IMG/VR virus record: IMGVR_UViG_3300023174_000046
Location: 1-64,000 of that record
Direction: 5' to 3' (one strand)
DNA: 64,000 bases
Below are positions 15,649-63,482 of the stretch, piece after piece; position 1 is the first letter of the stretch; the number at the start of each line of letters is the position of its first letter. Under the pieces are notes generated by a model. That model saw nothing but the letters and a program-made list of their open reading frames with translations. It had not been told where the DNA came from and did no database searches. The translations under genes were made by a program, and so were the position numbers.

Positions 15649-15685
15649 CTCTTGAACTTTACATCTCTTGGTTTATCATAAAATG

Positions 15686-16126
15686 GTGAAACATTTTATA
15701 ACTTGGGATATATTTGATGGCTATATTGATCAACTCTCGCAAAAAATAAAAGAAAATATAGACACCGCAGATTACGATATTGTTGGTATCTCACGAGGTG
15801 GTTTGATTCTTGCTGCAGCACTTGGCTATGCATTAAAAATAAAAAATGTTTATAGTGTTGGTGTAAGAAGCTATTCAAATAATGACGTTCAAGATGAAAT
15901 AGAGGTGTATCAGCATCTGAATCTTGGAAATTTAAAGCGTAATTTATTAGTAGTTGACGATGTATCGGATACAGGCAATACATTTTTATATCTACAGAAA
16001 CTGTTGTCAGATAAAGAATTTATAACTGTAAGTCTTGCTGTGAAGGATAAAACAAAGTGTGTTTCCGATTACAGTGCATTGCGACTAAATTCTGATATTT
16101 GGATAGTATTTCCGTGGGATAAGTAG
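15686..16126 (+). CDS. type I purine phosphoribosyltransferase (Gpt/Hpt-like)
   Basis: GISRGG, LVVDDVSDTGNT PRPP loop, WIVFPW; start ATG 15683 or GTG 15686 after TTGAAC-N16-TATCAT. Confidence 0.85.
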   Translation: MKHFITWDIFDGYIDQLSQKIKENIDTADYDIVGISRGGLILAAALGYALKIKNVYSVGVRSYSNNDVQDEIEVYQHLNLGNLKRNLLVVDDVSDTGNTFLYLQKLLSDKEFITVSLAVKDKTKCVSDYSALRLNSDIWIVFPWDK

Positions 16127-31609: not shown

Positions 31610-31629
31610 ACAACATTATATTACAGGAG

Positions 31630-31673: not shown

Positions 31674-31680
31674 TTTTATT

Positions 31681-31754
31681 CGGGCATTAGCACAGCCTGG
31701 TAGTGCACTTGCTTTGGGAGCAAGATGTCGCAGGTTCAAATCCTGCATGCCCGA
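31681..31754 (+). tRNA. tRNA-Pro(TGG)
   Basis: cttgc-TT TGG GA-gcaag. Confidence 0.93.
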
Positions 31755-31761
31755 AGTTTTT

Positions 31762-31839
31762 TGTTGGGTGGACGTTTTAGCGTTTTCCCTGTCCTTTAAA
31801 ACAACTGAAGAGAGAAACGCGACAAGTTGTTTACCAGCA
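31762..31839 (+). ncRNA. unannotated structured RNA (three-way junction with kissing loops)
   Basis: P1 tgttgg/ccagca, P2 ggac/gtcc, P3 aaacaact/agttgttt, loop-loop gcgtttt/gaaacgc. Confidence 0.5.
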
Positions 31840-31841
31840 TT

Positions 31842-31924
31842 GGGTAGATACCGAAGTGGCCAAACGGGGGAGACTGTAAATCTCTTGGCTTACGCCTTCA
31901 GTGGTTCGAATCCACTTCTGCCCA
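31842..31924 (+). tRNA. tRNA-Tyr(GTA)
   Basis: ggaga-CT GTA AA-tctct; long variable arm. Confidence 0.93.
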
Positions 31925-31930
31925 AATTTC

Positions 31931-32014
31931 CGTCGCATGGCGAAATGGCAGACGCGCTAGCCTTAGGAGCTAGTACCGCAAGGTGTGTAGGTTCAAGTCC
32001 TACTGTGACGACCA
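31931..32014 (+). tRNA. tRNA-Leu(TAG)
   Basis: ctagc-CT TAG GA-gctag; variable arm; encoded CCA. Confidence 0.92.
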
Positions 32015-32021
32015 TTATAAT

Positions 32022-32094
32022 GGGGGTGTAGCTCATCTGGTAGAGCGGGACCTTTGCAAGGTCTAGGTAGCGGGTTCGAGTCCTGTCACCTCCA
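32022..32094 (+). tRNA. tRNA-Ala(TGC)
   Basis: GGGGGTG/CACCTCC with G3-U70; TT TGC AA loop. Confidence 0.93.
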
Positions 32095-32130
32095 TGTTAT
32101 TAAAGTAAGATCCAAGGACTAAGTAATTAT

Positions 32131-35651: not shown

Positions 35652-38105
35652 TTATTTCTTTGTGTTAATTGTAGGTTGTGGTGCAACTCTGTTACCCGAT
35701 TCATTATTCAAGTCCATTGCAATGGTTCTTACTGCATCATTATCTCTTTTCAACGTTAATGGTAGATTCTTAAACGTGTGACTATGACCATACACAATGA
35801 CGCTATCTGGATCTGGAATTTGACCTGCAGTAGTAGTGGTAAATACCGGTGCAGGGTTACCACCCGCTTGACCTGTCATAGAAGCACACACAGGTAGATC
35901 TTTAGTCGCAAAAACTTCAACTGTCCCACCTTGTGGATCAACACCTGTACCAACTAAAGTACCTGTAGGTACATACCCAATTATTGCACCTGTAACTAAT
36001 GCATTATAACCGATAATTTTTGGTAACGCATTATTTGTTTGACCGGTAACAATTGTGCGGTTTGTTTCTTGAATTTCAGTAGGTGCAGTAATATGATTAA
36101 CAGTTAGTTCACCTTCTATGTGTGCACCACCACCCACAACCATGTTACGAGCGACCCCTAAATTACTATCAATAACAACTTGCTGATTGTAGCGTTGCTT
36201 GATATTAACAATATCAGCAATTAATTGTAATTTTTGACCGCCATCAATACACACTTCATTTTCACTGGCTATATTAACTTGCTGACCTGCAATGTTTGTA
36301 ATAGTGCCACTTACATTTACCGGTCCATAACTCTTGAAGTTTATACCACCAGCACCCACCATTAAATTGTATCTGTTACCAATTGTTTGTGTGTAAGTAC
36401 CGCCTGGGAGATCATCCACGTGCACATATTCAACTACCGGGCTTGGTTGCTGGCAGTTGAAAACACCTTGTGGGTGAACAATGACAGCATTAACACTAAT
36501 TTTACCAACCTTATCAATTCTTGTTGAAGGTAAATCATTAATATCCATACCAATTGTTTCAATTTTATTTTTTGTAATATTGATAATTTCGCTACCACCC
36601 ACACCCATTTGCTTCTCCAGATTTGTAAAATTGTCCATGTTATCAGAAATGTATTTTGCTATTTGCTGCTTACGAGGGTCTTCAAGAAAATCACCATCTT
36701 GTGAGCTAGGGCTCAATCCTGAGCCTTTGCATGCTGGGCATGTTTGACCGAAAATTGTTCCAACACCGGGAAATTTGCCACTAGTGGCAGGTATGCCTAT
36801 ACCAAAAGGTATAACTGCAGGGAGCCCCATGTTTGACCATGGTGAATTGATAAGAGAAGTTGTTTCACCAGTACCTGCATAAACAAAGATGTTATTAATT
36901 TTCCAATAAAAATCTTGACTGTCTGCGCAAACTGGACATGCAGCGTTTTTACCGCTTTTTGATTGAAAGGGTGATGTGAGATTTATGAACCCTTTTTTAA
37001 GAGCAGTTGTTCTTTTTGTTTCAAATAATTGCTTGAGATCAGCTAGGCCGCGTAACAGCTCTTTGTATTGTAAATGTGGTGTGTAGTTTAAATTGCCTAT
37101 TTTTCTGTATAAATCACCTCTTATAACATTATCATAATCTCTACCTACGTAAAGATTTTTAAAGCCATTAACAGTTAGGAACTGGTCTTGCATAACCAAC
37201 TTTTGGTCTGATTGAGTTGCAAGTTCTATATTTGTAAAATTATTAAATTCTTTAAATGAACCGGAGAAGTGAGTCATTTTTAGTGACTCACGGTTATCTG
37301 TATTGATAAACTCTAGTGTGCCGCCTTTTTGATTTATAACGTATTTGTTCCGGTAAGTATCAACATTTATATCAAATACATCTTTTCCAGATAGAGAATA
37401 ATTTTCATAATAACCAGGATAGTCTTGACCTGGTGAACTATCACCAACATTATCTAAACTATCATATATGCCTTTCCAATCTTCTTTGCCGTACGCAACA
37501 GCAAAATAAACTGGATGCATAATATCACCATCAGTAAAAAAGACATAGACGTGTGAACCAACGTTGGGCACACCAAACGTACCCTTGGCTCGATTTGAAT
37601 AGCTATTGGGTACATAATTATAGCTATATTTGTTTGTTATGTTTGTATTGTACTTTGCAGGGTCATTAAATGCATCGTTTAGCTTGTATTCAACAGACTC
37701 ATAAACATTTGCTGGCTTCTCTCCAATGTTATCAATATTCTGATTACCGACATCAGTATTTTTTTCTCGTGTTGGTTCGAAAGTGCTTAATCTTGCAGTA
37801 TCAGAAATAGATCCTACAGTTTTAAAGAAATTAAATCTACCACTTGCAGCTTCACCACTCACAGGAGCCGCACATTCAGCCCATGGTAATTGGAGCTTCA
37901 AATCCTCCAATATTGTATTCATGCTGCTATTAATATTGTCACCTAGGAACTTGAATTTTTTATCGTTCAGTGTATCAACCCAGCCGCGATAAGTTGTAGG
38001 CATTAAATGCGGTACCCATACTTTAACGCGTCCTCTTTTCTGTGGATCGTTATTCTGAACTACCATTCCCATGTAGTTGCCGTAGAATTTCTGTCTTTTA
38101 GCCAT
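35652..38105 (-). CDS. gp5/VgrG-like baseplate hub-spike protein
   Basis: Y.G.VV.N.DP.K.GRVKV OB-fold, LPWA, P.VGS.V.VFF..GD...PVY; beta-helix repeats; C-terminal HSH. Confidence 0.85.
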   Translation of the reverse strand: MAKRQKFYGNYMGMVVQNNDPQKRGRVKVWVPHLMPTTYRGWVDTLNDKKFKFLGDNINSSMNTILEDLKLQLPWAECAAPVSGEAASGRFNFFKTVGSISDTARLSTFEPTREKNTDVGNQNIDNIGEKPANVYESVEYKLNDAFNDPAKYNTNITNKYSYNYVPNSYSNRAKGTFGVPNVGSHVYVFFTDGDIMHPVYFAVAYGKEDWKGIYDSLDNVGDSSPGQDYPGYYENYSLSGKDVFDINVDTYRNKYVINQKGGTLEFINTDNRESLKMTHFSGSFKEFNNFTNIELATQSDQKLVMQDQFLTVNGFKNLYVGRDYDNVIRGDLYRKIGNLNYTPHLQYKELLRGLADLKQLFETKRTTALKKGFINLTSPFQSKSGKNAACPVCADSQDFYWKINNIFVYAGTGETTSLINSPWSNMGLPAVIPFGIGIPATSGKFPGVGTIFGQTCPACKGSGLSPSSQDGDFLEDPRKQQIAKYISDNMDNFTNLEKQMGVGGSEIINITKNKIETIGMDINDLPSTRIDKVGKISVNAVIVHPQGVFNCQQPSPVVEYVHVDDLPGGTYTQTIGNRYNLMVGAGGINFKSYGPVNVSGTITNIAGQQVNIASENEVCIDGGQKLQLIADIVNIKQRYNQQVVIDSNLGVARNMVVGGGAHIEGELTVNHITAPTEIQETNRTIVTGQTNNALPKIIGYNALVTGAIIGYVPTGTLVGTGVDPQGGTVEVFATKDLPVCASMTGQAGGNPAPVFTTTTAGQIPDPDSVIVYGHSHTFKNLPLTLKRDNDAVRTIAMDLNNESGNRVAPQPTINTKK

Positions 38106-38132
38106 TGAATTATTAATATTTAATAATATAAT
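38105..38132 (+). promoter_or_regulatory. sigma70-type leaderless promoter of the deazaguanine operon
   Basis: TTGAAT-N16-TATAAT-N6-ATG(38139). Confidence 0.7.
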
Positions 38133-38138: not shown

Positions 38139-38951
38139 ATGCTAATGAAAGTATCACACGAGTCTCCTGTATCTATACTTGATCTTTCTAAAGAATATAA
38201 CGATTTTGATTACTGTCTTGTACATCTTCTAGATCAGTATCCTTTATATAAAGATTTCTTTAAATCCGCTAGACAAATTTATAATAGAGAAGTATTACTT
38301 GACAATTCTATTTTTGAATTGGGCAAGGCTTTTGATGGCCATGAGTTCTGGGTAAAGGCTAAAGAAATTATGCCAAATATGTTTATTGTACCAGATGTAC
38401 TTGAGGATACAAAAGGTACAATAGAAAGCTTTAAAGCTTTTGAAGAATCCACAAGTGATATCAAGAGTAGCTTTCTTACAAAAGCCATTGGTGCAGTACA
38501 GGGTAAAAATTGGCACGAGCTAAGAGAATGTTACAAATTTATGGCAGATAATGCCGATATGATTGCCATAAGCTTCGACTTTAGTTACTATCAAGTTACA
38601 GGTGAAGGCACAACGCATTTAGAAAAATGGTGCTCTGGTCGTCAAAGGTTTATTTTGGATTTAATAAATACCGGTGTATGGAATTGGAGCAAGCCACATC
38701 ACTTACTTGGCTGCTCTCTAGCAAAGGAATTTAGGTATTATGTTGATAGAGATATTCACAATATTGTTAGTTGTGATACCAGCAATCCCGTTGTTGCTGC
38801 TATACATGGATTAAAATACGATGCAGATTATGGTTTGCAATCCAAGCCTTCAACAAAGTTAGCTGATTTAATTGAGCATAATTTTACTGATGATCAGCTT
38901 GAACTTGTAAAATATAACACTACAATGTTCAAGAAGATTATTCGCAGATGA
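38139..38951 (+). CDS. dpdA: TGT-fold 7-deazaguanine transglycosylase, DpdA3-like
   Basis: LDNSIFELG, VPDV, AVQG, HHLLGC, SCDTS match TGT-barrel motifs; no Zn-binding motif; next to formyltransferase and queF. Confidence 0.7.
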   Translation: MLMKVSHESPVSILDLSKEYNDFDYCLVHLLDQYPLYKDFFKSARQIYNREVLLDNSIFELGKAFDGHEFWVKAKEIMPNMFIVPDVLEDTKGTIESFKAFEESTSDIKSSFLTKAIGAVQGKNWHELRECYKFMADNADMIAISFDFSYYQVTGEGTTHLEKWCSGRQRFILDLINTGVWNWSKPHHLLGCSLAKEFRYYVDRDIHNIVSCDTSNPVVAAIHGLKYDADYGLQSKPSTKLADLIEHNFTDDQLELVKYNTTMFKKIIRR

Positions 38952-39517
38952 GACCTTGGGTAACATTTTTTTCACAAACCGGTACCGAGATATACGATCT
39001 CAGTAATATTATCAATACATACCCAGATTGTATTGCTACAAATAAACAAGATCATAAAACTACTAATATAGGGTTACGGGCAGTAACTGAATTTAGATCA
39101 CAAAAACTTAATGAAAACATTTGGGTTCAATTGCCACAAAAGCCAACAGTAAGTGATTATGAAAATGCTTTGAAAAATTATAATAAACCTGTTGTAACGT
39201 TACATGGATACTTGAGAATTATTCCAAAAGAAATTTGCGAGAAATATGAAATATACAATCTACATCCAGGTCTTATTAATAAATTTCCAGCATTAAAAGG
39301 TTTTAATCCGCAGGAAAGAGCTTTTGCAGGAGGCTATAGGTTAGCAGGATGTGTAATACACAGAGTAACGCCTGGAGTAGATGAAGGTGAAATATTAATG
39401 AGCCAAGGTGTGAGTATTGAAGGCATGAATCTTGATGGTGTTTATGGTGCTTTACGAGACACTGCACTTGATCTCTGGAAAAGCTTCTTTACATCGTATA
39501 ATATACTAAAACGTTAA
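38948..39517 (+). CDS. dpdN: PurN-like formyltransferase, DpdN-like
   Basis: LHGYLRII, YNLHPG, G.VIH.V..GVDEGEI (N/H/D catalytic set). Confidence 0.75.
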   Translation: MRPWVTFFSQTGTEIYDLSNIINTYPDCIATNKQDHKTTNIGLRAVTEFRSQKLNENIWVQLPQKPTVSDYENALKNYNKPVVTLHGYLRIIPKEICEKYEIYNLHPGLINKFPALKGFNPQERAFAGGYRLAGCVIHRVTPGVDEGEILMSQGVSIEGMNLDGVYGALRDTALDLWKSFFTSYNILKR

Positions 39518-39518
39518 T

Positions 39519-40478
39519 ATGGATATTTCGTTGCATTACGAGAACGTATTTCTCAAGCCTAACTTTAATACTGTACAAACAAGATCACAAATAGACACAG
39601 AAGTTATGTTTTGTGGCAAGACATTCATGCTGCCTGTGATACCTGCAAATATGAAATGCTGTGTTGATAGTGATGTTTGTAAGCTTTTAGATTCTAAGCA
39701 ATGCTTTTATATCATGCATAGATTTGATGAAGACATACAAAATTTTGTACGATATGCAAATTTACAAAATTTTAATACTGTATCCATCAGTGTAGGTATA
39801 CAGCAAAAAGATAGAAACCTTGTAACTGCTATTGGTCAAAGCTTGATGCGAGTAGATTTTATTACAATTGACGTTGCACATGGACATCATTCAAAAGTTG
39901 CAGATCAAATTAAACACATTAAACAAACATTGCCTGGCACAAAAGTTATAGCAGGTAATATCGCTACGTTCGAAGGTGTTGAATATCTGCATAGAGCTGG
40001 TGCTGATGCAGTTAAAGTTGGTATTGGTGGTGGTTATGCGTGTACTACAAAAGATAAGACAGGATTTACTTTTCCTATGTTTAGCTGTATTATAGAGTGT
40101 GCAAAGGACAGAGATGTGCCTATTATTGCAGATGGCGGTGTTCGTAGCAACGGTGATATTGCTAAAGCACTAGTAGCAGGTGCAAAGATGGTGATGTGTG
40201 GTTCTATTTTTGCAGCATGCTCAGATAGTCCTGCACCTGCTGTAAAAGATGCTTCTGGTAGACGATACAAACAATACTACGGGTCTGCTAGTATACACAA
40301 TAAACTTGATAAGAAAAATATTGAGGGTACTATGAAGCTTATGGATACAGATTCGTTTACTTACGAAGAAAAATTGCAAGAAATAAAACAAGACTTACAA
40401 AGTGCAATTAGTTATGCAGGTGGTTGCAATCTTGGTATATTAAATTTAAATAGAGTGGCCTACGGGGTAAGATTATGA
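39519..40478 (+). CDS. guaC: GMP reductase
   Basis: PANM, MHRF, TIDVAHGH, KVGIGGG..CTT, IADGG...GDIAKA; no CBS domains. Confidence 0.88.
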   Translation: MDISLHYENVFLKPNFNTVQTRSQIDTEVMFCGKTFMLPVIPANMKCCVDSDVCKLLDSKQCFYIMHRFDEDIQNFVRYANLQNFNTVSISVGIQQKDRNLVTAIGQSLMRVDFITIDVAHGHHSKVADQIKHIKQTLPGTKVIAGNIATFEGVEYLHRAGADAVKVGIGGGYACTTKDKTGFTFPMFSCIIECAKDRDVPIIADGGVRSNGDIAKALVAGAKMVMCGSIFAACSDSPAPAVKDASGRRYKQYYGSASIHNKLDKKNIEGTMKLMDTDSFTYEEKLQEIKQDLQSAISYAGGCNLGILNLNRVAYGVRL

Positions 40479-40822
40479 ACAAAGAAGATGTAATAAAATA
40501 TGTTGAAAAGAACTTCCCTGTAACATGCAAGGAATTTCAAAGAATTCAAGCCGAACTATATGAGACTTTTTGTAAGAAGCAATTTGATTACGGTCCAGGT
40601 AATATTTCCCTTGGTTCAGACTTAGTTAAAGAAGAAGATAAATTTGCAGCTGTATCTGCTATTGTTGTTAGATTAAACGATAAAATTCAACGACTAATTA
40701 ATTTGGTACTGAAAAAGAAAGCAATGAATTCTGTCAATGAACCAGTTATGGATGCTTTTAGAGACTCTGCTGTGTATTGTGTTATAGCTGAAATAGTTAA
40801 CAACAATAAATGGGGTAAATAA
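40475..40822 (+). CDS. nucleotide-modification-associated all-alpha (DUF1599/MazG-like) protein
   Basis: KK..DYG..N, VRLNDK..RL.NL, E...D.F.D.AVY.VIA. Confidence 0.7.
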   Translation: MNKEDVIKYVEKNFPVTCKEFQRIQAELYETFCKKQFDYGPGNISLGSDLVKEEDKFAAVSAIVVRLNDKIQRLINLVLKKKAMNSVNEPVMDAFRDSAVYCVIAEIVNNNKWGK

Positions 40823-40862
40823 TTGTAGTTGATTACATCTTTAAAATATATTATAATATATA

Positions 40863-41030
40863 ATGTTTAAAAAACTTTTACCTAATTTCTTAACACGTGA
40901 CAAAGAGATAGTAGTTAAATTCAAAGAAATTGAAGAAGAGAATAAAATTCTTCTCGAAGAGATCAGACAGTTGAAGAAGCTTCTTTATGATATAGAATTA
41001 GATTTTGCTGCAAGAGTAAAAAACAAATGA
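40863..41030 (+). CDS. 55-aa coiled-coil protein (not in ORF track)
   Basis: MFKKLLPNFLTRDKEIVVKFKEIEEENKILLEEIRQLKKLL...; TTGATT-N17-TATAAT; ATGA overlap with next gene. Confidence 0.6.
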   Translation: MFKKLLPNFLTRDKEIVVKFKEIEEENKILLEEIRQLKKLLYDIELDFAARVKNK

Positions 41031-41614
41031 TCTTATCGTTTACTGGTCCACAAAGTTCAGGTAAGACTACTCTTCTAAAGAAGTGTAAAGAGTATTATGG
41101 TTCGAAGTTATGTTATATTGATGAAGTTACTAGACTAATTAAACGTTGGCATAATTGTGATATAAATGAAGAAGGTGCAAGTGATGTTACGCAGACATTA
41201 ATTCTAAATAAAGAATTTGAGAATTTGTTTTATAATTACAAAGGATTTGGATTTCAAGGCATATTGCATGATCGTTGCTTGATGGATGGCATGGTTTATA
41301 CAAGTTATTTTGCTGGTAGTAGACTAAATGATTTTCCTGTATCTAATAGCTTAGGTTTGTTATACTATACAAATTATATTAAAAAGTATGATCATATCTT
41401 TTATCCAAGTCCTCATGATGTTCCGCTGGTTGATGATGGTGAGAGAAGCATTAATAAAGAATTTAGGGATGCTATTATTGATAAGTATGAAAATTTTTGG
41501 CTAAAAGATGAGAGATTGAAAGATAAAGTTACTATTTTAAGAGGGACTGTTGACGAGCGAATGGAACAGATTAAGTCAAAGATATGTCAGTTGATGCCAA
41601 GCCTTTCTGTTTAG
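41027..41614 (+). CDS. P-loop nucleotide kinase-like (AAA_28/NadR-type) protein
   Basis: GPQSSGKTT, E..R, DRC..D..VY, DDGER. Confidence 0.8.
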   Translation: MILSFTGPQSSGKTTLLKKCKEYYGSKLCYIDEVTRLIKRWHNCDINEEGASDVTQTLILNKEFENLFYNYKGFGFQGILHDRCLMDGMVYTSYFAGSRLNDFPVSNSLGLLYYTNYIKKYDHIFYPSPHDVPLVDDGERSINKEFRDAIIDKYENFWLKDERLKDKVTILRGTVDERMEQIKSKICQLMPSLSV

Positions 41615-42903
41615 CTCCTTGGGCAGGCATTCACGCACTACCAGATGGGTTGGTGTACCCATGTTGCATGTCTACATTCGATCCCGAAAATTCGTTCGGT
41701 GATCTCAATAAAAATACAATTGAAGATATTTTAAATTCAGAAAAAGCAAAGCAATTTAGATGCAAGATGATGGCAAATAAGCCGGATGAGAGAGCTTGTA
41801 GTCATTGCATAAGTGAAGAAAAAACAGGAACAAAAAGTTTCCGTAATCACTGGAATACTAAGTATGAACATACTCTTCCTTTTGTTAAAGAAACAGATAA
41901 AGATGGTTATTATCGATTTAAAAATTTTCCATATATTGATATAAGACTATCAAGCTTGTGTAATTTTAAATGTAGAATGTGTCATAGTGGCTTGAGCTCT
42001 GCTTGGTTATTAGAAGACATAAAGTATGAATCAAATTATCAAAATTCTTTTAATCTTAAAACCGGTGTTATTGAGATACCACAAAAAGAAAAACTTATTA
42101 AATTTATTATTGATAGGATTGAGCATGTGGAGGAGATTGAGTTTGCAGGTGGTGAACCTTTTCTAATAGCAGATTATTTTACTCTAATTAAAGAATTTAA
42201 AAGAGCAAAAAATTTTAACGTTAGGATAAGATTTCATACAAATGCATCTTCTTTGTATTGTAAGGGTGAATATATACCAAACTTGCTCAAGGAGTTTAAA
42301 AATGTTTTTATAATGTTGAGTATTGACGGTTACAGTGAAGTTAATGACTACATGAGAAAAGGTAGTGTATATAATAAAATTGTTACAAATATAACTTTAC
42401 TTAAACAAATAGTACCACAAGCATTCTTGAGATTGGTACCGACAATTAGCATACCAACTGTATATAGTGTGCCTTTCTTGTATGTAGATTTCTTACGCAA
42501 AGGTTTAATTCGGCATGAGGATATTGCATGCAGACCTCTTTACGGGCCTGAATATCTTAACATACAGACACTACCATTAGAAGATAAATTAAAAATTTTA
42601 AAGTTCTATAATTACTTTATTGATAACATAACAGCTAAACTTCTACAACACTTTCCAGATGAAAGCGTCACATATGTTAAGCAAGAATTTTCATCAATTA
42701 TGAATTTCATGTTGCTTAAAAATCAAATTGTGCAATTTAATAGCAATAGGTTTAAGGAGAGTATTAAGCGGCTTGATATTCGACGAGACGAAAGTTACGA
42801 AGATATTTCACCAGAAACTGCTCATCTTTTATCAGGCAGTGTTTCAATATACAATCTAGATAACAAATATAATGAGTTGAAGACTTTCATAGATAGCATA
42901 TAA
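41584..42903 (+). CDS. radical SAM protein with N-terminal SPASM/twitch domain
   Basis: FCLAPW...PCC...CSHC; CNFKCRMC; GGEPF; SIDG. Confidence 0.88.
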   Translation: MSVDAKPFCLAPWAGIHALPDGLVYPCCMSTFDPENSFGDLNKNTIEDILNSEKAKQFRCKMMANKPDERACSHCISEEKTGTKSFRNHWNTKYEHTLPFVKETDKDGYYRFKNFPYIDIRLSSLCNFKCRMCHSGLSSAWLLEDIKYESNYQNSFNLKTGVIEIPQKEKLIKFIIDRIEHVEEIEFAGGEPFLIADYFTLIKEFKRAKNFNVRIRFHTNASSLYCKGEYIPNLLKEFKNVFIMLSIDGYSEVNDYMRKGSVYNKIVTNITLLKQIVPQAFLRLVPTISIPTVYSVPFLYVDFLRKGLIRHEDIACRPLYGPEYLNIQTLPLEDKLKILKFYNYFIDNITAKLLQHFPDESVTYVKQEFSSIMNFMLLKNQIVQFNSNRFKESIKRLDIRRDESYEDISPETAHLLSGSVSIYNLDNKYNELKTFIDSI

Positions 42904-42912
42904 TATTGTACA

Positions 42913-43833
42913 ATGAATACAGAATTAGATAATAGTAATATTTCAAAGCATTTAGGCAAAATTACCGGGTACAAGTGTACATATGATCCTTCACTTCTGG
43001 TTCGCGAGCCAAGACAAAATAATAGAAAGCATTTGAAAATTTCTGATGAAAATCCGCCTTTCTGTGGCTATGATGTTTGGAATGCTTATGAAGTGTCTTG
43101 CTTGACTCAAGAGGGCATGCCCATTGCTGCTATTGCTAAAGTTGTTTACCCTGCTACTAACAAATATATTGTTGAATCAAAGTCCATTAAACTGTACATG
43201 AATTCGTTTAATATGGAGACATATCAAGGCAATATTATTAGTGTACTGCAGCAGCTTGAAGCTGTAATGGAGAATGATCTTTCTAAATTGCTTGAAACTG
43301 AAGTTAGAGTATGTGTCAGGCTTACTAAGGCCATTGATGATGCAATGTATTACCCAGCATTGTTTCCTTCTGCGTTGTATCCAACGCTTGAGAATAATAT
43401 TGATGTAACGACTATTAAATCGCGTGGCTACAAAGAAGATCCTAAATTACTTGGTTGGTTGGAAGGTGACAGTAGCAAAGTGCAGCGCTTTCATTCAGCT
43501 CTATTAAAGAGTAATTGCAGGGTCACATCTCAACCGGACTGGGGGGATGTTTATATTCATTACAAAGGACCTTATGAACTCAATCAAACATCTCTATTGC
43601 AGTACATTGTTTCGTTTAGAGATGAATGTCATTTTCATGAAGAGATTTGTGAAACGATTTACAAGCGTCTTTATGATTTGACCAAGCCTGAAGAACTGAT
43701 GGTATCTTGCTTATATGTAAGACGGGGTGGTATTGATATTAATCCTATTAGAGCTAATAGTCAGGAACTACTCAAGCAGAACGGTGCCATGTGGGACAAG
43801 TGGAAGTACTTTACTAAGACAGTAAGACAGTAA
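42913..43833 (+). CDS. queF: NADPH-dependent preQ0 reductase (two-domain QueF)
   Basis: DVWNAYEVS, VESKSIKLY.NSF, LLKSNC.VT.QPDWG, FHEEICE, RRGGIDINP.R. Confidence 0.93.
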   Translation: MNTELDNSNISKHLGKITGYKCTYDPSLLVREPRQNNRKHLKISDENPPFCGYDVWNAYEVSCLTQEGMPIAAIAKVVYPATNKYIVESKSIKLYMNSFNMETYQGNIISVLQQLEAVMENDLSKLLETEVRVCVRLTKAIDDAMYYPALFPSALYPTLENNIDVTTIKSRGYKEDPKLLGWLEGDSSKVQRFHSALLKSNCRVTSQPDWGDVYIHYKGPYELNQTSLLQYIVSFRDECHFHEEICETIYKRLYDLTKPEELMVSCLYVRRGGIDINPIRANSQELLKQNGAMWDKWKYFTKTVRQ

Positions 43834-44354: not shown

Positions 44355-45851
44355 TTAGAAGTAGACTGATTGTGTTCCAGGGGTAAAGGCAACGCCTAGA
44401 CCCGAGATGATGATAACGTGGTAGTACAAGTTAGCACCAAATATATTGTCGACTACACCGTAGCGGGTCATGAGACCAACACGAGGAGCGAAATCATTTG
44501 GACCAATTGTACGCTGTACCATAACAGGGATGTATGGGCAGTAGATAATACCGGTATCATAAAACTCTGGACCCTTGTAGCCCAATAGGGCGTACTCGAG
44601 AGGAGTTTGACGAGAACCAGATTGAAACTGTGCCTCAGTACGTGTGTCACGATACACATTAAAACGTCCACCAAGTGAACCTACCTTAGCTACGCCTACT
44701 GGTTGTGTGTTTACATTACCCTGTACAGGTACCCACTGGAATTCAGGGAGCATCTCAAGGATAGCGCAAACGCGAGGTGTTGCAACAACAAAGTTGGCTG
44801 CACCACGACGATTACGAACAGCAATACGGTTAGCTTCGATAATTAGTCTCTGATAGAAATCGCGATTACGTTCAACGAGCCAACGACCGTCTGCTGAAGC
44901 TGGGCTCCAAACAGAGTAGCCGGTGCCTGCGCCAGCGTTTAGAGCAACCTGGATCATGCGGATGATCATTTCACGATCGATTTCTGCCTGTAGCTCATAG
45001 CTCATAGCATTTGTCAATTCAGTGTCAATGTCAATACCGTTCATGTTCTTAAGATCTTGCTCCAATTCTACTGACCAGCGAGCGCCTAGTCTACGTGTAC
45101 CGGCTTCAACTGCTGTCTTCTCGAAGGAAACTACGACCTGAGGGATTGCTCCTGTCAATTCGTAATCCTTGAGAATACGTGCTACACCTGCATCTGATCC
45201 GAGGATCGAGAAAGCAGAGTTACCGGACAAGCCGGCAGATGATGTACCAGTGAAACGTGTATCTAGGAACTGATAACCCAATTCTTGACCGTCTGTACCT
45301 GCAGCGGTAGGACCGCCGTAGTTTGTACCTACAGTTGTACCGGTAGCTGATGGTTGACCATCAACACCGTTACCAAGGGCTTCGTTATCGTAACGATAGC
45401 GCAAAGCAAATGCCAAACCAACTGGGCCTGACATTGGCTGAACGCCAACGATTTCATTAGAAATAAGTTCTGGGAACGTTCTACGAATCATCGGAATCAA
45501 GATCTTTGGAAGACGATAATCACCTGCTGCATAGGTATCAGTACCAGGAGTACCAGCTGGGTTATTAACCCAATTGGATGTCTGGAATGTACCTAGAGAA
45601 CCACCGGCATTGCCAGCGGCATTTGAACCGGCCTGATCAGGATATGAAGGGTTATAATTAGGCCCTGCTTCCCTCAAGCACCATTGTTCTTGGTTTTCCA
45701 AGAGAATGGCTGTGTTCAAACGGGTATGATCATCTTCGATTGCTGCAACATTCTTGGAAGAGTAATCCAATACTGGACTCCACTTTTCAAGAAGAGCTGC
45801 GGCTCTTGATTCGTCAATATATGACTGCGAAGGACGAACAACTTTTTTCAT
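44355..45851 (-). CDS. gp23: major capsid protein (T4 gp23 family)
   Basis: KWSPVL, AILLENQ, GVQPM.GP.GL.FALR, WSVELEQDL, E.DRE, YCPYIP, TRYG. Confidence 0.97.
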   Translation of the reverse strand: MKKVVRPSQSYIDESRAAALLEKWSPVLDYSSKNVAAIEDDHTRLNTAILLENQEQWCLREAGPNYNPSYPDQAGSNAAGNAGGSLGTFQTSNWVNNPAGTPGTDTYAAGDYRLPKILIPMIRRTFPELISNEIVGVQPMSGPVGLAFALRYRYDNEALGNGVDGQPSATGTTVGTNYGGPTAAGTDGQELGYQFLDTRFTGTSSAGLSGNSAFSILGSDAGVARILKDYELTGAIPQVVVSFEKTAVEAGTRRLGARWSVELEQDLKNMNGIDIDTELTNAMSYELQAEIDREMIIRMIQVALNAGAGTGYSVWSPASADGRWLVERNRDFYQRLIIEANRIAVRNRRGAANFVVATPRVCAILEMLPEFQWVPVQGNVNTQPVGVAKVGSLGGRFNVYRDTRTEAQFQSGSRQTPLEYALLGYKGPEFYDTGIIYCPYIPVMVQRTIGPNDFAPRVGLMTRYGVVDNIFGANLYYHVIIISGLGVAFTPGTQSVYF

Positions 45852-60350: not shown

Positions 60351-61097
60351 TTATCTATCTGGTAAGATTAGATTATTATATAATGACTTTTCAAATTTCT
60401 CTTTTTCAGCGATCTGCTCTTGTGTTTTAAGTAGATCTTCTACTTGTGTAGACGTCTGCAAATCACTTATTACACTTTGTTCTTCACCAATAAGATCACC
60501 ATCCACATTCAAATAATATCTTACTAACTGAATTCTTTCTTCTGGTTTGCCAAATATTTCCACAATACCAGGGGAATCATCTTTTGGAAAAAAAGTAGAA
60601 ACACCTGTTTTTTGAATTTGATGCACAATTGTTTTGAAGATATTATCAATTTCTTTGATATAAGACTCATCTACTTCACGCTTATCATCACTAACAACAG
60701 GTACCGGAGCAACACGTGTAATGGGTGTGAAGAAAATAATATCTAAATAACGCATCGACTCACGGACGAGTGGTAAACATTTTTCAATGAATTTGTCATC
60801 AAATTTATCAGGAGTTTTAGTATTGCCCCAAAGAGAATAAACAATATTATCAAGCGGGCAACGGTCAAATATGACTTTATTGCCTTTATCACAATTTTTT
60901 TGCATATCTTCAATCATGCAATTGAGAATCTTCCATTGCAAATCCTTGGTAGTCTCCTTGCTATGACGAGCCTTCTCTTCTTTTATTGCTTTTCTGTAGC
61001 TTGATTCAACCAATCTATATGTTGGCCATTCCTTAAGAAAGTCATTTGTAAATGTTGTCTTACCTTGACATGCAGATCCAGAAACAGCAATTCTCAT
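60351..61097 (-). CDS. P-loop nucleotide kinase-like (AAA_28) protein
   Basis: GSACQGKTT, DRCPLD..VY; downstream of queE. Confidence 0.8.
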   Translation of the reverse strand: MRIAVSGSACQGKTTFTNDFLKEWPTYRLVESSYRKAIKEEKARHSKETTKDLQWKILNCMIEDMQKNCDKGNKVIFDRCPLDNIVYSLWGNTKTPDKFDDKFIEKCLPLVRESMRYLDIIFFTPITRVAPVPVVSDDKREVDESYIKEIDNIFKTIVHQIQKTGVSTFFPKDDSPGIVEIFGKPEERIQLVRYYLNVDGDLIGEEQSVISDLQTSTQVEDLLKTQEQIAEKEKFEKSLYNNLILPDR

Positions 61098-61098: not shown

Positions 61099-61848
61099 TT
61101 ATACTTTAAGAGCTTTATCCCAGATTACAAGCTGCAAGCGTGGGCTAAAATTAAACATATGTTTCTTGCACAACTCTGCAACCATTGGTGCTTTTTCAGC
61201 TAATTCAGCTCTACTGCCGCAGCAAGGCATCAACCATACACGGTTTTTCGGTACATTAATATCCGGATTGTGTATATATTTCTCGAGAATTTCATCCACA
61301 TCAGCTTCATTACTAACAACAAATTTAAACCCTGAACCATTCTCCGCATGCCACTTTAAAACAGCTGGCTTGTATCTCTTTTCAACAGGATCCCCGTTAT
61401 TAGCCAATTTTGGTGATGTAGTGAATGTTGCTTTAAATTCGTTACCCCACGCTTCATCAGGAAGAATTGTTGCGTTAGTTTCAAAATCAATAACAGGTAC
61501 ATAACCAAAGCGCTCTGCATATGCACGCACAAGCTTAAGCAATTGTTTTTGCTGTATGAGTGGTTCACCACCAGTAATCTTCCATATTGCACCATCATGC
61601 AGCTTACAATTGTAAGCATTCTGAGCCATAAATTCAAAAATTTCGTCAAATGTCATTCTGTTCTTTACAGACCAACTGACAAAACTATCACAACCATGAG
61701 GTGCATCTGCTGATTTGAATCCTTGACATGTTAAGTTACACATTGAAAGACGCATAAAAACAGAAGGTATACCTGCATATTCACCTTCTCCTTCTACAGT
61801 ATAAAAGATTTTATCATCACTTAAAAAGATTGTATTTTCGTTATCCAT
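61099..61848 (-). CDS. queE: 7-carboxy-7-deazaguanine synthase
   Basis: FYTVEGEG...G.PSVF.R...CNL.C...CDS, ITGGEP, ETN.T, SPKL, KFVV, RLQ...W. Confidence 0.92.
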   Translation of the reverse strand: MDNENTIFLSDDKIFYTVEGEGEYAGIPSVFMRLSMCNLTCQGFKSADAPHGCDSFVSWSVKNRMTFDEIFEFMAQNAYNCKLHDGAIWKITGGEPLIQQKQLLKLVRAYAERFGYVPVIDFETNATILPDEAWGNEFKATFTTSPKLANNGDPVEKRYKPAVLKWHAENGSGFKFVVSNEADVDEILEKYIHNPDINVPKNRVWLMPCCGSRAELAEKAPMVAELCKKHMFNFSPRLQLVIWDKALKV

Positions 61849-62840: not shown

Positions 62841-63482
62841 TTAAACACTCCAAGATGTACCTGCAAAAGGATTGCTCATGCCTTTGGTAACTTTGGTACC
62901 AAGAGGTGCACCCATCTCAACGTTAATGCCTGCATTAACTACATTTACCTGCTCAAGTGATGGTTGTAATGTTGTTGCAATTGTATTGTTTGTAACCACA
63001 TGCTTATCAGAAGCATATGGGTTATGATCCGGTACATGTTGATAGCCTGAACTAACAATTGCAGAATTTTTATCATGCTCCCATACTTCAACCCTACTAA
63101 CCCAACATCTATTATTAGTTATGCCTCTTACATGCGCATCAGCTACATCATAACACCAGTCTGCTGTTCTCTCAATACCAACACCTTTGTCCATAACTCT
63201 TAGATCTGCAGCACCTAAGGTGTGTAAATTTTTAAAATGATCTAGCAAAGGATCATCAGCTGAAATGCATAATGTATGATCAAATTGATTTTCTAAGACT
63301 TGCTTAAGTTCCTTTAAACCACCAAAATCTACAACCCAGTTCTTTTCATCTAGATAATTACATTCAAACCAAAATTTTGCTATCAACCTGTATCCATGGA
63401 TATATTTGCAATGGCTGTCTGCTTTCCACTGTCTAAATGCACAACTTCCTAATTCAATTATCTTTGTACTTTCGTATTTCAT
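62841..63482 (-). CDS. queD: 6-carboxy-5,6,7,8-tetrahydropterin synthase
   Basis: SHC..IHGY, VVDFG.LK, FDH, G.E, V.V.E...NSA; TTGATT-N16-TATAAT-N6-ATG. Confidence 0.9.
   Translation of the reverse strand: MKYESTKIIELGSCAFRQWKADSHCKYIHGYRLIAKFWFECNYLDEKNWVVDFGGLKELKQVLENQFDHTLCISADDPLLDHFKNLHTLGAADLRVMDKGVGIERTADWCYDVADAHVRGITNNRCWVSRVEVWEHDKNSAIVSSGYQHVPDHNPYASDKHVVTNNTIATTLQPSLEQVNVVNAGINVEMGAPLGTKVTKGMSNPFAGTSWSV

What the first reader, a model, noticed from the sequence alone, without database searches (positions are those of the whole stretch)
38139..43833. 7-deazaguanine DNA-modification operon predicting formylated preQ1 (fdPreQ1) replacing guanine
Seen: one co-oriented cluster with a Zn-less TGT-barrel protein, a PurN-like formyltransferase and QueF, plus queE and queD at 61-63 kb. 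Known: the combination DpdA3 + DpdN + QueDEF has been described for phage DNA carrying 2'-deoxy-7-(formylamino)methyl-7-deazaguanine, and DpdA3 is associated with complete G replacement. Inference: this T4-like phage, probably of a PVC host, has a heavily or fully G-substituted genome. folE and queC are not in this window.
Basis: partly seen in the sequence, partly recalled or inferred. Interest (0 to 1): 0.75.

Follow-up and report, generated by a model that had tools for sequence, protein, structure and literature searches.

The report
Phage operon replacing guanine with fdPreQ1
An uncultured freshwater T4-like phage carries the full gene set known from one cultured phage to swap every guanine in its DNA for a formylated 7-deazaguanine, and the swap enzyme is always paired with a nucleotide-type kinase whose role the published model does not explain.

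Summary
Window 38139-43833 is one co-oriented, tightly packed operon. It encodes a 270-aa Zn-less TGT-fold protein (DpdA3 family), a PurN-like formyltransferase (DpdN group) and a bimodular QueF. QueE and QueD lie at 61-63 kb. FolE (64946-65596) and QueC (84788-85525) lie just outside the window in the same 217-kb genome. The four key proteins are 30-46% identical to those of Flavobacterium phage immuto_2-6A, whose dG is fully replaced by fdPreQ1. The prediction of fdPreQ1-DNA is therefore well supported by homology, though unproven for this phage.

The kinase is the most conserved partner of DpdA3. It is present in 76 of 80 related IMG/VR loci and in 6 of 6 informative divergent contigs. Among 50,697 phage records it occurs only in DpdA3-type phage lineages. 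NTP pyrophosphatases are also linked to DpdA3 in relatives.

This leaves open, at about even odds, that DpdA3 phages make the modified base in the deoxynucleotide pool rather than by exchange on DNA.

Verdict: a new member of a known kind, common in lakes, with a testable mechanistic question.

The parts
38105..38132 (+). sigma-70-like promoter match (TTGAAT-16-TATAAT, 10 of 12) just upstream of dpdA3
   Evidence: It is one of the three best matches in the region. The other two lie just upstream of the 55-aa ORF (40829-40857) and of queF (42877-42904). The total number of matches is not above the shuffled expectation, so this is only suggestive.
38139..38951 (+). DpdA3-family 7-deazaguanine transglycosylase: a minimal, Zn-less TGT-fold TIM barrel of 270 aa
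   Evidence: 43% identity to immuto DpdA3 and 46% to CP220 gp056. The AF2 model has pLDDT 96.4, and the fold matches TGT with Z 18.5. The invariant D213 (DTSNP) aligns with catalytic Asp256 of bacterial DpdA 7UI4. The family profile also finds phiST DpdA3.
38948..39517 (+). DpdN-group PurN-like formyltransferase (predicted preQ1/dPreQ1 N-formyltransferase)
   Evidence: PF00551 at 5.8e-16. 45% identity over 95% of the length to immuto DpdN only; all other phage hits cover just the catalytic core. The N-x-H and Asp motifs are present. Natural DpdA3-DpdN fusions exist (P0005, P0074).
39519..40478 (+). GMP reductase (GuaC type 2-like)
   Evidence: NF003966 scores 330.6 bits against a cut-off of 344, and PF00478 gives 2e-55. 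The catalytic Cys lies in GIGGGYACTT. The gene is in the operon in 23 of 80 related loci. GuaC also occurs in unrelated phages.
40475..40822 (+). DUF1599 / 'nucleotide modification associated domain 1' protein, function unknown
   Evidence: AFDB cluster match with TM 0.93, E 6.5e-9 and 45% identity. Atlas feature score 0.97. Weak PF07659 hits in 19 of 33 family members. Present in 47 of 80 loci and fused to DpdN in L064, L066, L067 and L069.
40863..41030 (+). 55-aa ORF of unknown function
   Evidence: Conserved in only 4 of 80 loci.
41027..41614 (+). Kin1: AAA_28 P-loop protein of the nucleoside/nucleotide kinase type, the conserved partner of DpdA3
   Evidence: PF13521 at 2.7e-11 and phrog_2107 at 3e-21. 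The profile against PDB hits deoxynucleoside kinase, thymidylate kinase, NadR ribosylnicotinamide kinase and dGK. Present in 76 of 80 loci. Among 50,697 phage records it matches only Campylobacter (17) and Flavobacterium immuto (4) phage records, the two groups that carry DpdA3 (18 records). It lies within two genes of dpdA3 in 6 of 6 informative divergent contigs.
41584..42903 (+). N-terminal-twitch radical SAM protein (SPASM/twitch domain followed by rSAM core), role unknown
   Evidence: NF033640 scores 301.6 bits against a cut-off of 170. Present in only 2 of 80 related loci. Independent contigs bridge its junctions with the neighbouring genes.
42913..43833 (+). QueF, bimodular NADPH-dependent preQ0 reductase (preQ0 to preQ1)
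   Evidence: TIGR03138 at 2e-77. 46% identity to immuto QueF. The QueF motif ESKSIKLY and the catalytic Cys in CRVTSQPDW are present.
60351..61097 (-). Kin2: second AAA_28/dNK-like kinase with a C-terminal extension, directly downstream of queE on the minus strand
   Evidence: PF13521 at 7.9e-15 and dNK at 3e-5. The Kin1 family profile hits it at 6e-25.
61099..61848 (-). QueE-like radical SAM enzyme (CDG synthase), phage type
   Evidence: phrog_2076 at 9.4e-45 and TIGR03963 at 6e-13.
62841..63482 (-). QueD-like CPH4 synthase with a CxxxHGY motif and a roughly 65-aa C-terminal extension
   Evidence: PF01242 at 2.4e-17 and phrog_2389 at 1.3e-36. The HGY variant of the motif is shared with the immuto and phiST QueD proteins.
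15668..16126 (+). Purine/xanthine-type phosphoribosyltransferase, a possible guanine-salvage helper (weak link)
   Evidence: PF00156 at 4.4e-12. phmmer gives 4.5e-10 to immuto gp60, which lies inside the immuto 7-deazaguanine cluster. Not otherwise associated with DpdA3 phages.

Best explanation
The operon is a DpdA3/DpdN-type 7-deazaguanine DNA hypermodification module of an uncultured freshwater T4-like phage.

Inferred from homology:
- FolE, QueD, QueE and QueC, encoded elsewhere in the genome, convert GTP to preQ0.
- QueF reduces preQ0 to preQ1.
- The PurN-like DpdN formylates the aminomethyl group, probably with a formyl-tetrahydrofolate donor.
- The minimal TGT-fold enzyme DpdA3 exchanges guanine for the 7-deazaguanine by a TGT-like double-displacement mechanism through an invariant Asp (D213).

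The expected result is virion DNA in which dG is largely or wholly replaced by 2'-deoxy-7-(formylamino)methyl-7-deazaguanosine (fdPreQ1), which protects it from host nucleases.

What is not settled is where the exchange happens. The published proposal is post-replicative exchange on DNA. My reading of the gene linkage gives about equal weight to exchange on a free deoxyguanosine nucleotide or nucleoside. In that route the DpdA3-linked kinases phosphorylate the product and the phage polymerase incorporates it. GMP reductase would then drain the competing G-nucleotide pool.
For: - Homology and synteny with the one phage shown by LC-MS to carry 100% fdPreQ1. Identities are DpdA3 43%, DpdN 45%, kinase 30% and QueF 46%, in the same order.
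- TGT fold with high confidence.
- The catalytic Asp aligns with DpdA Asp256.
- A complete preQ1 pathway is present in the genome.
- QueF, DpdN and QueC catalytic motifs are intact.
- DpdA3-DpdN and DpdN-DUF1599 gene fusions in relatives show functional coupling.
- The module is conserved between the gp5-like hub and gp23 in 80 of 80 sampled IMG/VR loci; at least 530 were detected.
- The sequence is confirmed in independent metagenomes.
Against: - There are no chemical data for this phage.
- Identity to the characterised system is only 30-46%.
- DpdA3 and DpdN activities have never been reconstituted. Heterologous tests of DpdA3 in E. coli failed (PMC10516641).
- A stand-alone class-II glutamine amidotransferase follows queC. 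It resembles, weakly, the Gat domain of the dG+ synthase Gat-QueC, so part of the preQ0 could go elsewhere.
- The in-operon radical SAM enzyme could modify the base further.
- No dGTP-clearing enzyme (HD, MazG, dUTPase_2) is recognisable in this genome. That weakens the nucleotide-pool route here.
Confidence: 0.72

Rival explanations
1. Insertion route A, the published model. DpdA3 is a DNA-guanine transglycosylase that swaps G for preQ1 or formyl-preQ1 in already replicated DNA. The linked P-loop protein is then an accessory ATPase that drives the reaction, as DpdB does for bacterial DpdA, or a general salvage kinase.
For: - All characterised members of the TGT/DpdA superfamily act on polynucleotides.
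- Bacterial DpdA needs an ATPase partner (PMC10164549).
- Hutinet et al. propose post-replicative insertion for all DpdA subfamilies.
- This genome has no recognisable dGTPase.
Against: - DNA-level DpdA1, DpdA2, DpdA4 and bDpdA reach only 0.01-30% of G, while DpdA3 phages reach 100%.
- DpdA3 lacks the Zn site and the insertions that bDpdA keeps, and the family is acidic (median pI 5.5).
- The partner's nearest solved relatives are small-molecule nucleoside/nucleotide kinases, not ParB-like or helicase ATPases.
- DpdA3 did not modify DNA in E. coli.
Confidence: 0.42
2. Insertion route B, nucleotide-pool synthesis with the same logic as T4 hydroxymethyl-dC. A dGTP/dGMP-producing phosphohydrolase feeds DpdA3. 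DpdA3 exchanges the base on dGMP or dG. DpdN formylates. Kin1 and Kin2 phosphorylate the product to the di- or triphosphate, and the phage polymerase incorporates it. GMP reductase lowers competing dGTP.
For: - The AAA_28 kinase is the most conserved neighbour of dpdA3: 76 of 80 loci and 6 of 6 informative divergent contigs.
- Among 50,697 phage records it matches only Campylobacter and immuto phage records, the two groups with DpdA3.
- phiST has an AAA_18 kinase-like gene next to dpdA3.
- NTP phosphohydrolases sit beside dpdA3 in relatives: MazG in phiST and L091/L092, PRA-PH in immuto, an HD-kinase fusion in CP220, and dUTPase/DCD elsewhere.
- Kin2 lies directly downstream of queE on the same strand in this genome.
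- GMP reductase is in the operon.
- Replacement is complete in all tested DpdA3 phages, and free ADG nucleoside was reported in CP220-infected cells (as cited in PMC10516641).
- PurN-type enzymes act on small phosphoribosyl substrates (established knowledge).
Against: - No TGT-fold enzyme is known to act on a mononucleotide.
- No dGTPase is recognisable in this genome.
- The DUF1599 protein shows no detectable relation to MazG and has no solved relative.
- Gene linkage is not biochemistry.
- Many of the 80 loci are close relatives and are not independent.
Confidence: 0.45
3. The genes serve queuosine-type modification of the phage's own GUN-anticodon tRNAs (Asp, Asn, Tyr) rather than DNA.
For: The window encodes tRNA-Asp(GUC), Asn(GUU) and Tyr(GUA). 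The preQ1 pathway is the bacterial Q precursor pathway.
Against: - There is no canonical TGT: no PF01702 hit in the genome, no Zn site, and a minimal barrel with no tRNA-binding additions.
- There is no QueA.
- The closest characterised homologues sit in phages with fully modified DNA.
- A formyltransferase has no place in Q synthesis.
Confidence: 0.04
4. The DNA carries a different or mixed 7-deazaguanine, such as plain dPreQ1, dG+ made with the amidotransferase next to QueC, or a further radical-SAM-derived derivative. Alternatively it is only partly substituted.
For: - 22 of 80 related loci lack DpdN but keep DpdA3, the kinase and QueF, so the family is chemically diverse.
- An Ntn-type GATase (MCGIFG) follows queC and is weakly similar to the Gat domain of 9g Gat-QueC.
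- The operon holds a twitch radical SAM enzyme of unknown role.
Against: - DpdN and QueF are intact and closest to those of the fdPreQ1 phage.
- The same QueC-GATase pair occurs beside QueF in Vibrio phage 2.275.O. This fits an ammonia-supply role for QueC better than G+ synthesis.
- The radical SAM gene is present in only 2 of 80 relatives, so it is not core.
Confidence: 0.2

Closest known systems
[quoted passage not shown] 2023, PMC10516641)
   Same: The core genes and their order are the same: dpdA3-dpdN-kinase-queF. Identities are 43%, 45%, 30% and 46%. The QueD CxxxHGY variant is shared. The full preQ1 pathway is encoded by the phage.
   Different: - Here the operon sits between late structural genes (gp5-like hub, gp23) of a 217-kb T4-like genome, not beside the DNA polymerase.
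- It has gained a GMP reductase, a DUF1599 protein, a 55-aa ORF and a twitch radical SAM gene.
- It lacks the PRA-PH-type NTP pyrophosphatase that precedes dpdA3 in immuto.
- The biosynthesis genes are scattered over about 47 kb.
Campylobacter phage CP220 group (dADG, 100% of G) and Cellulophaga phage phiST (dDG, 100% of G), the other DpdA3 phages
   Same: A DpdA3 homologue is present: 46% identity for CP220, and 3.6e-16 by family profile for phiST. Each has an adjacent P-loop kinase-like gene and a nearby NTP phosphohydrolase.
   Different: Their pathways stop earlier, at CDG, ADG or DG. They have no QueF and no DpdN. The phiST kinase-like protein belongs to another P-loop family, AAA_18.
Bacterial DpdA/DpdB (Salmonella Montevideo, PDB 7UI4) and phage DpdA1/DpdA2
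   Same: TGT-type barrel. The catalytic Asp in the HLLG...SxD[ST] region aligns.
   Different: bDpdA has 436 residues in the deposited chain, keeps the structural Zn site and has four DNA-binding insertions. It needs the ParB-like ATPase DpdB and modifies less than 0.1% of G. DpdA3 has 270 residues, no Zn site and no insertions. There is no significant pairwise similarity to 9g DpdA1.
T4 hydroxymethyl-dC and S-2L/phiVC8 2-aminoadenine pathways (dNTPase + base-modifying enzyme + dedicated kinase; established knowledge)
   Same: Complete replacement of one base. The replacement enzyme is linked to a nucleotide kinase and, in relatives, to an NTP pyrophosphatase.
   Different: No homology between the enzymes. 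A dNTPase is not recognisable in this genome. Whether a TGT-fold enzyme can act on a mononucleotide is unknown.

Membership tests
DpdA3 subfamily of DpdA/TGT transglycosylases | TGT-like (beta/alpha)8 barrel fold | tested here: met
   The AF2 model has pLDDT 96.4 and pTM 0.92, with eight strands. The top 50 Foldseek PDB hits are all TGT, with E about 3e-8. VIA gives Z 18.5 and rmsd 2.9 A over 232 residues of Z. mobilis TGT.
DpdA3 subfamily of DpdA/TGT transglycosylases | Groups by sequence with the DpdA3 proteins of immuto, CP220 and phiST, not with tRNA TGT or DpdA1 | tested here: met
   The only strong phage hits are Campylobacter CP220-type (44.8-46.0%) and immuto (43.2%) proteins. phiST appears at low stringency and at 3.6e-16 with the family profile. 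There is no PF01702 hit. Pairwise comparison with 9g DpdA1 gives E 0.57.
DpdA3 subfamily of DpdA/TGT transglycosylases | Catalytic aspartate pair of the double-displacement mechanism | tested here: inconclusive
   The invariant D213 (DTSNP) aligns with chain residue 276 of 7UI4. That residue is Asp256 if the deposited chain carries a 20-residue offset, which I inferred from Phe265 falling at chain position 285. The invariant D55 (LDNSxFEL) resembles the TGT D102 motif DSGGFQ by motif only; no residue-level structural alignment was available.
DpdA3 subfamily of DpdA/TGT transglycosylases | Co-encoded 7-deazaguanine synthesis genes | tested here: met
   QueF, QueE, QueD, FolE and QueC are all in the same 217-kb genome.
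DpdA3 subfamily of DpdA/TGT transglycosylases | Guanine/7-deazaguanine exchange activity and complete G replacement in virion DNA | not testable with these tools
   This needs enzymology and LC-MS. Only assembled contigs of short-read metagenomes were available.
DpdN (preQ1/dPreQ1 formyltransferase, PurN superfamily) | Formyl_trans_N core with the Asn-x-His and Asp catalytic residues | tested here: met
   PF00551 at 5.8e-16 and TIGR00639 PurN at 2e-14, well below its cut-off. NLHP is at residue 104, and VDEGEIL supplies the Asp.
DpdN (preQ1/dPreQ1 formyltransferase, PurN superfamily) | Full-length similarity to the immuto DpdN group, and co-occurrence with DpdA plus FolE through QueF | tested here: met
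   45% identity over 95% of the length to immuto DpdN; every other phage formyltransferase matches only 44-51% of the length. DpdN is present in 58 of 80 related DpdA3 loci and is fused to DpdA3 in P0005 and P0074.
DpdN (preQ1/dPreQ1 formyltransferase, PurN superfamily) | Formyl transfer to the 7-aminomethyl group | not testable with these tools
   This has never been shown biochemically, even for immuto DpdN.
QueF type II (bimodular preQ0 reductase) | QueF_N plus QueF domains, the QueF motif and the catalytic Cys | tested here: met
   PF14819 at 1.4e-33, PF14489 at 8.9e-23 and TIGR03138 at 2e-77 (260 bits against a cut-off of 293). ESKSIKLY and CRVTSQPDW are present.
Bacterial tRNA-guanine transglycosylase (Q pathway) | PF01702 match, structural Zn site (CxCxxC...H), and downstream QueA | tested here: not met
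   No PF01702 hit. The cysteines at 26, 131, 165, 192 and 212 do not form the motif. No QueA.
Gat-QueC dG+ synthase (phage 9g type) | Class-II GATase domain fused to QueC | tested here: not met
   QueC (245 aa) and the GATase (216 aa, MCGIFG) are separate adjacent genes. The GATase has only 23% identity (E 9e-5) to the 9g Gat domain.
Pre-replicative dNTP-pool replacement systems (T4 hmC type) | Dedicated nucleotide kinase linked to the replacement enzyme | tested here: met
   Kin1 is in the operon and Kin2 lies next to queE. Both are AAA_28 proteins with dNK, TMPK and NadR-RNK as their nearest solved relatives. The linkage is conserved.
Pre-replicative dNTP-pool replacement systems (T4 hmC type) | Phosphohydrolase that removes the canonical dNTP | tested here: not met
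   No HD, MazG, MazG-like or dUTPase_2 hit in this genome. Such enzymes are present beside dpdA3 in phiST, immuto, CP220 and L091/L092.

The most novel reading that the evidence does not exclude
DpdA3 is not a DNA transglycosylase. It is the first TGT-fold enzyme that exchanges the base on a free deoxyguanosine nucleotide or nucleoside. Together with its near-universal AAA_28 kinase partner, and in relatives a MazG, HD or PRA-PH NTPase, it forms a pre-replicative pathway to a 7-deaza-dGTP analogue. That would explain why only DpdA3 phages reach 100% guanine replacement. The DUF1599/Nmad1 protein and the GMP reductase would be further pool-shaping parts of that pathway.
Probability: 0.42. Interest if true: 0.85.

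Novelty: new member of a known kind. Interest (0 to 1): 0.6.

Why it matters
Complete replacement of a canonical base is rare and blunts restriction enzymes and other DNA-targeting host defences. This locus shows that the fdPreQ1 system, known from one cultured Baltic Flavobacterium phage, belongs to a large clade of freshwater and marine T4-like phages. At least 530 loci were found in IMG/VR, and the DpdA3 family spans 1,419 clusters at 50% identity. Metagenomic DNA from lakes therefore probably holds a sizeable pool of G-less genomes. Such DNA can behave abnormally with restriction-based methods and with native-DNA (nanopore) base calling.

The survey also shows a DpdA3-kinase gene pair more conserved than any biosynthesis gene. 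The two papers I searched for the term (PMC10516641 and PMC6884629) do not mention a kinase, and my searches of the held library found no discussion of it. This makes the open question of how DpdA3 phages achieve 100% substitution directly testable with two small proteins.

Tried and rejected
1. Direct sequence searches of the 270-aa protein against Pfam, NCBIfam and PDB gave nothing useful. Only a family profile touched bacterial DpdA, and weakly (E 0.78). The fold search settled the matter.

2. I tested whether the 115-aa DUF1599 protein is a MazG-like NTP pyrophosphatase and hence the missing dGTPase.
- hhalign against immuto PRA-PH and phiST MazG gave probabilities below 1%.
- Foldseek and VIA against PDB gave only generic helical hairpins, with two weak MazG-like rows at TM 0.4-0.47.
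- This idea is not supported. The function stays unknown.

3. I looked for a recognisable dGTPase in the genome with PF01966, PF03819, PF12643 and PF08761. None was found.

4. I looked for DpdA3-kinase gene fusions among the long family members. None was found, only DpdA3-DpdN fusions and endonuclease or insertion variants.

5. I tested the phosphoribosyltransferase at 15668-16126 as a DpdA3-specific partner. It matches immuto gp60 by phmmer, but tblastn shows no association with DpdA3 phages. I dropped it as a core part.

6. I tested whether the GMP reductase and the radical SAM protein are core. GuaC is in 23 of 80 loci and is widespread in unrelated phages. The rSAM gene is in 2 of 80. Both are accessory.

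7. Laying public runs on the operon gave only assembler contigs. They confirm the sequence but say nothing about modification.

I rebuilt the alignment without them.

9. The paper of Iyer et al. 2013 on Nmad domains is not held. What I recall of it is not used as evidence.

10. I did not run complex prediction for DpdA3 with Kin1. I make no claim that they bind, and a pass would not separate the two insertion routes.

11. The PVC host suggestion was not tested.

Full report
**What is there.** The window is the first 64 kb of a 217,413-bp IMG/VR viral record (CheckV 100% complete, 35.7% G+C). Between a gp5-like baseplate hub gene (35652-38105, minus strand) and a small ORF followed by the gp23 major capsid gene (44355-45851, minus strand) lies a block of eight plus-strand ORFs, 38139-43833. 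Most of their starts and stops overlap or lie within 1-10 nt. In order they are:
- a 270-aa protein with no Pfam or NCBIfam hit;
- a 189-aa PurN-like formyltransferase (PF00551, 5.8e-16);
- a 319-aa GMP reductase (NF003966, 330.6 bits against a cut-off of 344);
- a 115-aa protein;
- a 55-aa ORF;
- a 195-aa AAA_28 P-loop protein;
- a 439-aa radical SAM protein with an N-terminal twitch/SPASM domain (NF033640, 301.6 bits);
- a 306-aa bimodular QueF (TIGR03138, 2e-77).

On the minus strand at 60-63 kb lie a second AAA_28/dNK-like protein (60351-61097), QueE (61099-61848) and QueD (62841-63482), with PhoH between them on the plus strand. FolE is at genome position 64946-65596. QueC is at 84788-85525, directly after UvsX.

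**The first protein is a DpdA3.** Its only strong matches among 50,697 phage records are hypothetical proteins of the Campylobacter CP220 group (44.8-46.0% identity) and the annotated 'DNA guanine transglycosylase DpdA' of Flavobacterium phage immuto (43.2%) (pairwise E 6e-66).
- An AlphaFold2 model built on 72 family members is very confident (pLDDT 96.4, pTM 0.92). It is a plain eight-stranded barrel with a C-terminal helix.
- Every one of the top 50 Foldseek hits in the PDB is a tRNA-guanine transglycosylase (E about 3e-8). VIA-align gives Z 18.5 and rmsd 2.9 A over 232 residues of Z. mobilis TGT.
- A family profile finds only one PDB sequence, bacterial DpdA 7UI4. The match lies on the HLLG...SxD[ST] segment. 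If the deposited chain carries a 20-residue offset, which I inferred from the position of Phe265, the invariant D213 of the family falls on catalytic Asp256 of DpdA.
- Other invariant positions (D55 in LDNSxFEL, D86, VQG, HLLG) recall the TGT active-site motifs. That is resemblance of motifs, not a residue-level structural alignment.
- The protein has no zinc motif, and the family is acidic (median pI 5.5).
- It gets no PF01702 hit, nor does anything else in the genome. It shows no significant pairwise similarity to DpdA1 of phage 9g.
- The family profile also retrieves phiST DpdA3 (3.6e-16).

**The rest of the known pathway.** The formyltransferase is 45% identical over 95% of its length to immuto DpdN. 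All other phage formyltransferases match only the catalytic core, covering 44-51% of the length. The Asn-x-His and Asp catalytic residues are present. QueF is 46% identical to immuto QueF and keeps the QueF motif and the catalytic cysteine. QueD carries CxxxHGY instead of CxxxHGH, but so do the QueD proteins of immuto and phiST, both from phages with proven 7-deazaguanine DNA.

According to Hutinet et al. [quoted passage not shown] It contains no dG but 345,000 fdPreQ1 per 10^6 nt, and DpdN was proposed as the formyltransferase. Gene order in immuto is dpdA3 - small ORF - dpdN - 'thymidylate kinase' - queF. That is the order here, apart from the inserted genes. By homology and synteny, the prediction of fdPreQ1-DNA for this phage is about as good as a sequence-based prediction can be.

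**How common and how variable.** The DpdA3 family has 1,419 clusters (50% identity representatives) at E <= 1e-3 in 1.8 billion proteins, and 220 at E <= 1e-30. A scan of IMG/VR found at least 530 loci. I examined the 80 best, at 54-89% identity. In nearly all of them the module sits between the gp5-like hub and gp23.
- The AAA_28 protein is present in 76 of 80 loci; the four without it are cut short by contig ends.
- QueF is in 73, DpdN in 58, the 115-aa protein in 47, GMP reductase in 23 and the radical SAM gene in 2.
- 22 loci keep DpdA3, kinase and QueF but lack DpdN. They presumably make plain dPreQ1 or something else.

Natural fusions tie the parts together. DpdA3-DpdN fusions exist (P0005 and P0074, 447 aa), as do DpdN fusions with the 115-aa domain (L064, L066, L067, L069). 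Near-identical contigs of the operon, including pieces that bridge the radical-SAM junctions, occur in freshwater and lake metagenomes from three studies. The capsid protein is only 33-34% identical to those of T4-like cyanophages, its nearest cultured relatives. The phage therefore belongs to a distant T4-like lineage. I found no evidence about its host.

**The 115-aa protein** belongs to DUF1599, 'nucleotide modification associated domain 1'. The evidence is an AFDB cluster hit with TM 0.93, E 6.5e-9 and 45% identity, an Atlas feature score of 0.97, and weak PF07659 hits in 19 of 33 members. It has no solved relative and no detectable relation to MazG-type pyrophosphatases. Its function remains unknown. 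Its fusion to DpdN says that it works with the formylation step.

- A profile of the AAA_28 protein finds, in the PDB, a deoxynucleoside kinase (4.8e-5), thymidylate kinase over its full length (8e-5), the ribosylnicotinamide kinase domain of NadR (3e-4) and deoxyguanosine kinase (0.011). These are small-molecule nucleoside/nucleotide kinases.
- Among the 50,697 phage records its relatives occur only in Campylobacter (17 records) and immuto (4 records) phages, the two groups in which DpdA3 was found (18 records). I did not check whether the three extra Campylobacter records encode DpdA3.
- It lies directly downstream of dpdA3 in CP220. In immuto it is two genes downstream, after dpdN.
- In six of six informative contigs carrying more divergent DpdA3 proteins (33-43% identity, different phage backbones), an AAA_28 gene lies within two genes of dpdA3.
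- In phiST the gene just upstream of dpdA3 is another kinase-like P-loop protein, of family AAA_18.
- NTP phosphohydrolases are linked too: MazG in phiST and directly upstream of dpdA3 in L091/L092, a PRA-PH-type pyrophosphatase upstream in immuto, an HD-kinase fusion upstream in CP220, and dUTPase or DCD elsewhere.
- In this genome a second AAA_28 kinase lies directly downstream of queE on the same strand, and a GMP reductase sits in the operon.
- The word 'kinase' does not occur in Hutinet et al. 2023 or in the 2019 paper. The 2023 authors report that their attempts to test DpdA3 in E. coli were unsuccessful.

**Mechanism.** The steps GTP to preQ0 to preQ1, formylation, and a TGT-like guanine-for-deazaguanine exchange are inferred from homology with good support. 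Where the exchange takes place is not shown by anything.

The published view is post-replicative exchange on DNA. In its favour:
- all known TGT/DpdA enzymes act on polynucleotides;
- bacterial DpdA needs an ATPase partner, a role the P-loop protein could play;
- this genome has no recognisable dGTPase.

Against it:
- DNA-level DpdAs reach at most 30% of G, while DpdA3 phages reach 100%;
- DpdA3 has lost the Zn site and lacks the insertions that bDpdA has;
- the partner looks like a nucleoside/nucleotide kinase rather than a DNA-dependent ATPase;
- the trio of NTPase, exchange enzyme and kinase is the logic of every known complete base replacement made in the dNTP pool (T4 hmC, 2-aminoadenine phages; established knowledge).

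I rate the nucleotide-pool route at about 0.42-0.45 and the DNA route at about 0.42. GMP reductase fits the pool route better, because it drains GMP and hence dGTP. However, it is accessory and also occurs in unrelated phages.

**Rivals about the product.** A tRNA-Q function is very unlikely (0.04). The phage does encode tRNA-Asp, Asn and Tyr with GUN anticodons. But it has no canonical TGT, no Zn site and no QueA, and a formyltransferase has no role in Q synthesis.

A different or mixed base is possible (0.2). A 216-aa Ntn-type glutamine amidotransferase (MCGIFG) follows queC, and it resembles weakly the Gat domain of the dG+ synthase Gat-QueC of phage 9g. But the same QueC-GATase pair stands beside QueF in Vibrio phage 2.275.O, which suggests an ammonia-supply role for QueC. 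The radical SAM protein could add a further step, but it is present in only 2 of 80 relatives.

**Comparison and novelty.** The locus passes the sequence-based tests for DpdA3, DpdN and QueF. Their activities cannot be tested here. It fails the tests for tRNA TGT and for fused Gat-QueC. It is a new member of a known kind (the immuto-type fdPreQ1 system), set in a new genomic place and with accessory genes: GuaC, DUF1599 and a twitch rSAM. What is new is the wider picture. The system is abundant in lake and marine T4-like phages, and its real core is a DpdA3-kinase pair that the published model does not account for.

**Scores.** Interest is 0.6. Confidence in the product-level explanation is 0.72. 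The most novel reading not excluded is that DpdA3 is a mononucleotide- or nucleoside-level base exchanger in a pre-replicative pathway: probability about 0.42, interest if true 0.85.

Noticed in passing
G000 85530-86180 (+), i.e. L002:2219-2869, just outside the window: A stand-alone 216-aa class-II (Ntn, MCGIFG) glutamine amidotransferase lies directly downstream of queC. The same QueC-GATase pair, at 30% identity, sits in the QueF-YhhQ-QueC-GATase-FolE cluster of Vibrio phage 2.275.O. It looks like a split version of Gat-QueC or an ammonia supplier for QueC.
   Followed up: partly
window 25059-32095: Twelve tRNA genes in two clusters, including Asp(GUC), Asn(GUU) and Tyr(GUA), the classes that carry queuosine in bacteria. 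No His(GUG) is present.
   Followed up: partly
window 62841-63482 (-): QueD has CxxxHGY instead of the canonical CxxxHGH zinc motif, as do the immuto and phiST QueD proteins. It also carries a roughly 65-aa C-terminal extension absent from those two.
   Followed up: partly
window 41584-42903 (+): A radical SAM protein with the twitch/SPASM domain at the N terminus (NF033640) is inserted between the kinase and queF. Only 2 of 80 related loci have it. Weak relatives (22-25% identity) occur in KVP40-like vibriophages, a group in which 7-deazaguanine DNA modification has been reported.
   Followed up: partly
P0013, P0053, P0058, P0034 (family members): Some DpdA3 genes are interrupted or extended. 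Two have an extra 30-40 residues splitting the barrel. One carries a NUMOD3 (homing-endonuclease-type) tail. One has a 316-aa N-terminal extension of unknown nature.
   Followed up: partly
L095 (contig of P0012): A DpdA3 with its AAA_28 partner sits next to a DCD-type deaminase/dUTPase-like gene and a Vut_1 (YhhQ-type 7-deazaguanine precursor transporter) gene. No synthesis genes appear in the 7.4-kb stretch retrieved. This could be a salvage-based version of the system.
   Followed up: no
L087 (Bacillus phage BSTP12, 20682-21470 of MW354678): A 262-aa protein next to FolE/QueD and DNA polymerase I is hit by the DpdA3 profile (1.2e-17) and also weakly by DUF6610, the DpdA4 family. It may bridge the two subfamilies. 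Its GenBank product name ('NADR_SALTY') looks like a mis-annotation.
   Followed up: no
window 57866-58630 (-) and G000 86177-86851 (+): Two glycosyltransferase-family genes (GT2; Glyco_tranf_2_5), the second directly after the QueC-GATase pair. Whether they have any link to nucleic-acid modification is unknown.
   Followed up: no
window 38139 versus 38145: Family members start at the equivalent of the second ATG (MKVSHE...). The true start of dpdA3 may therefore be 38145 rather than 38139.
   Followed up: no
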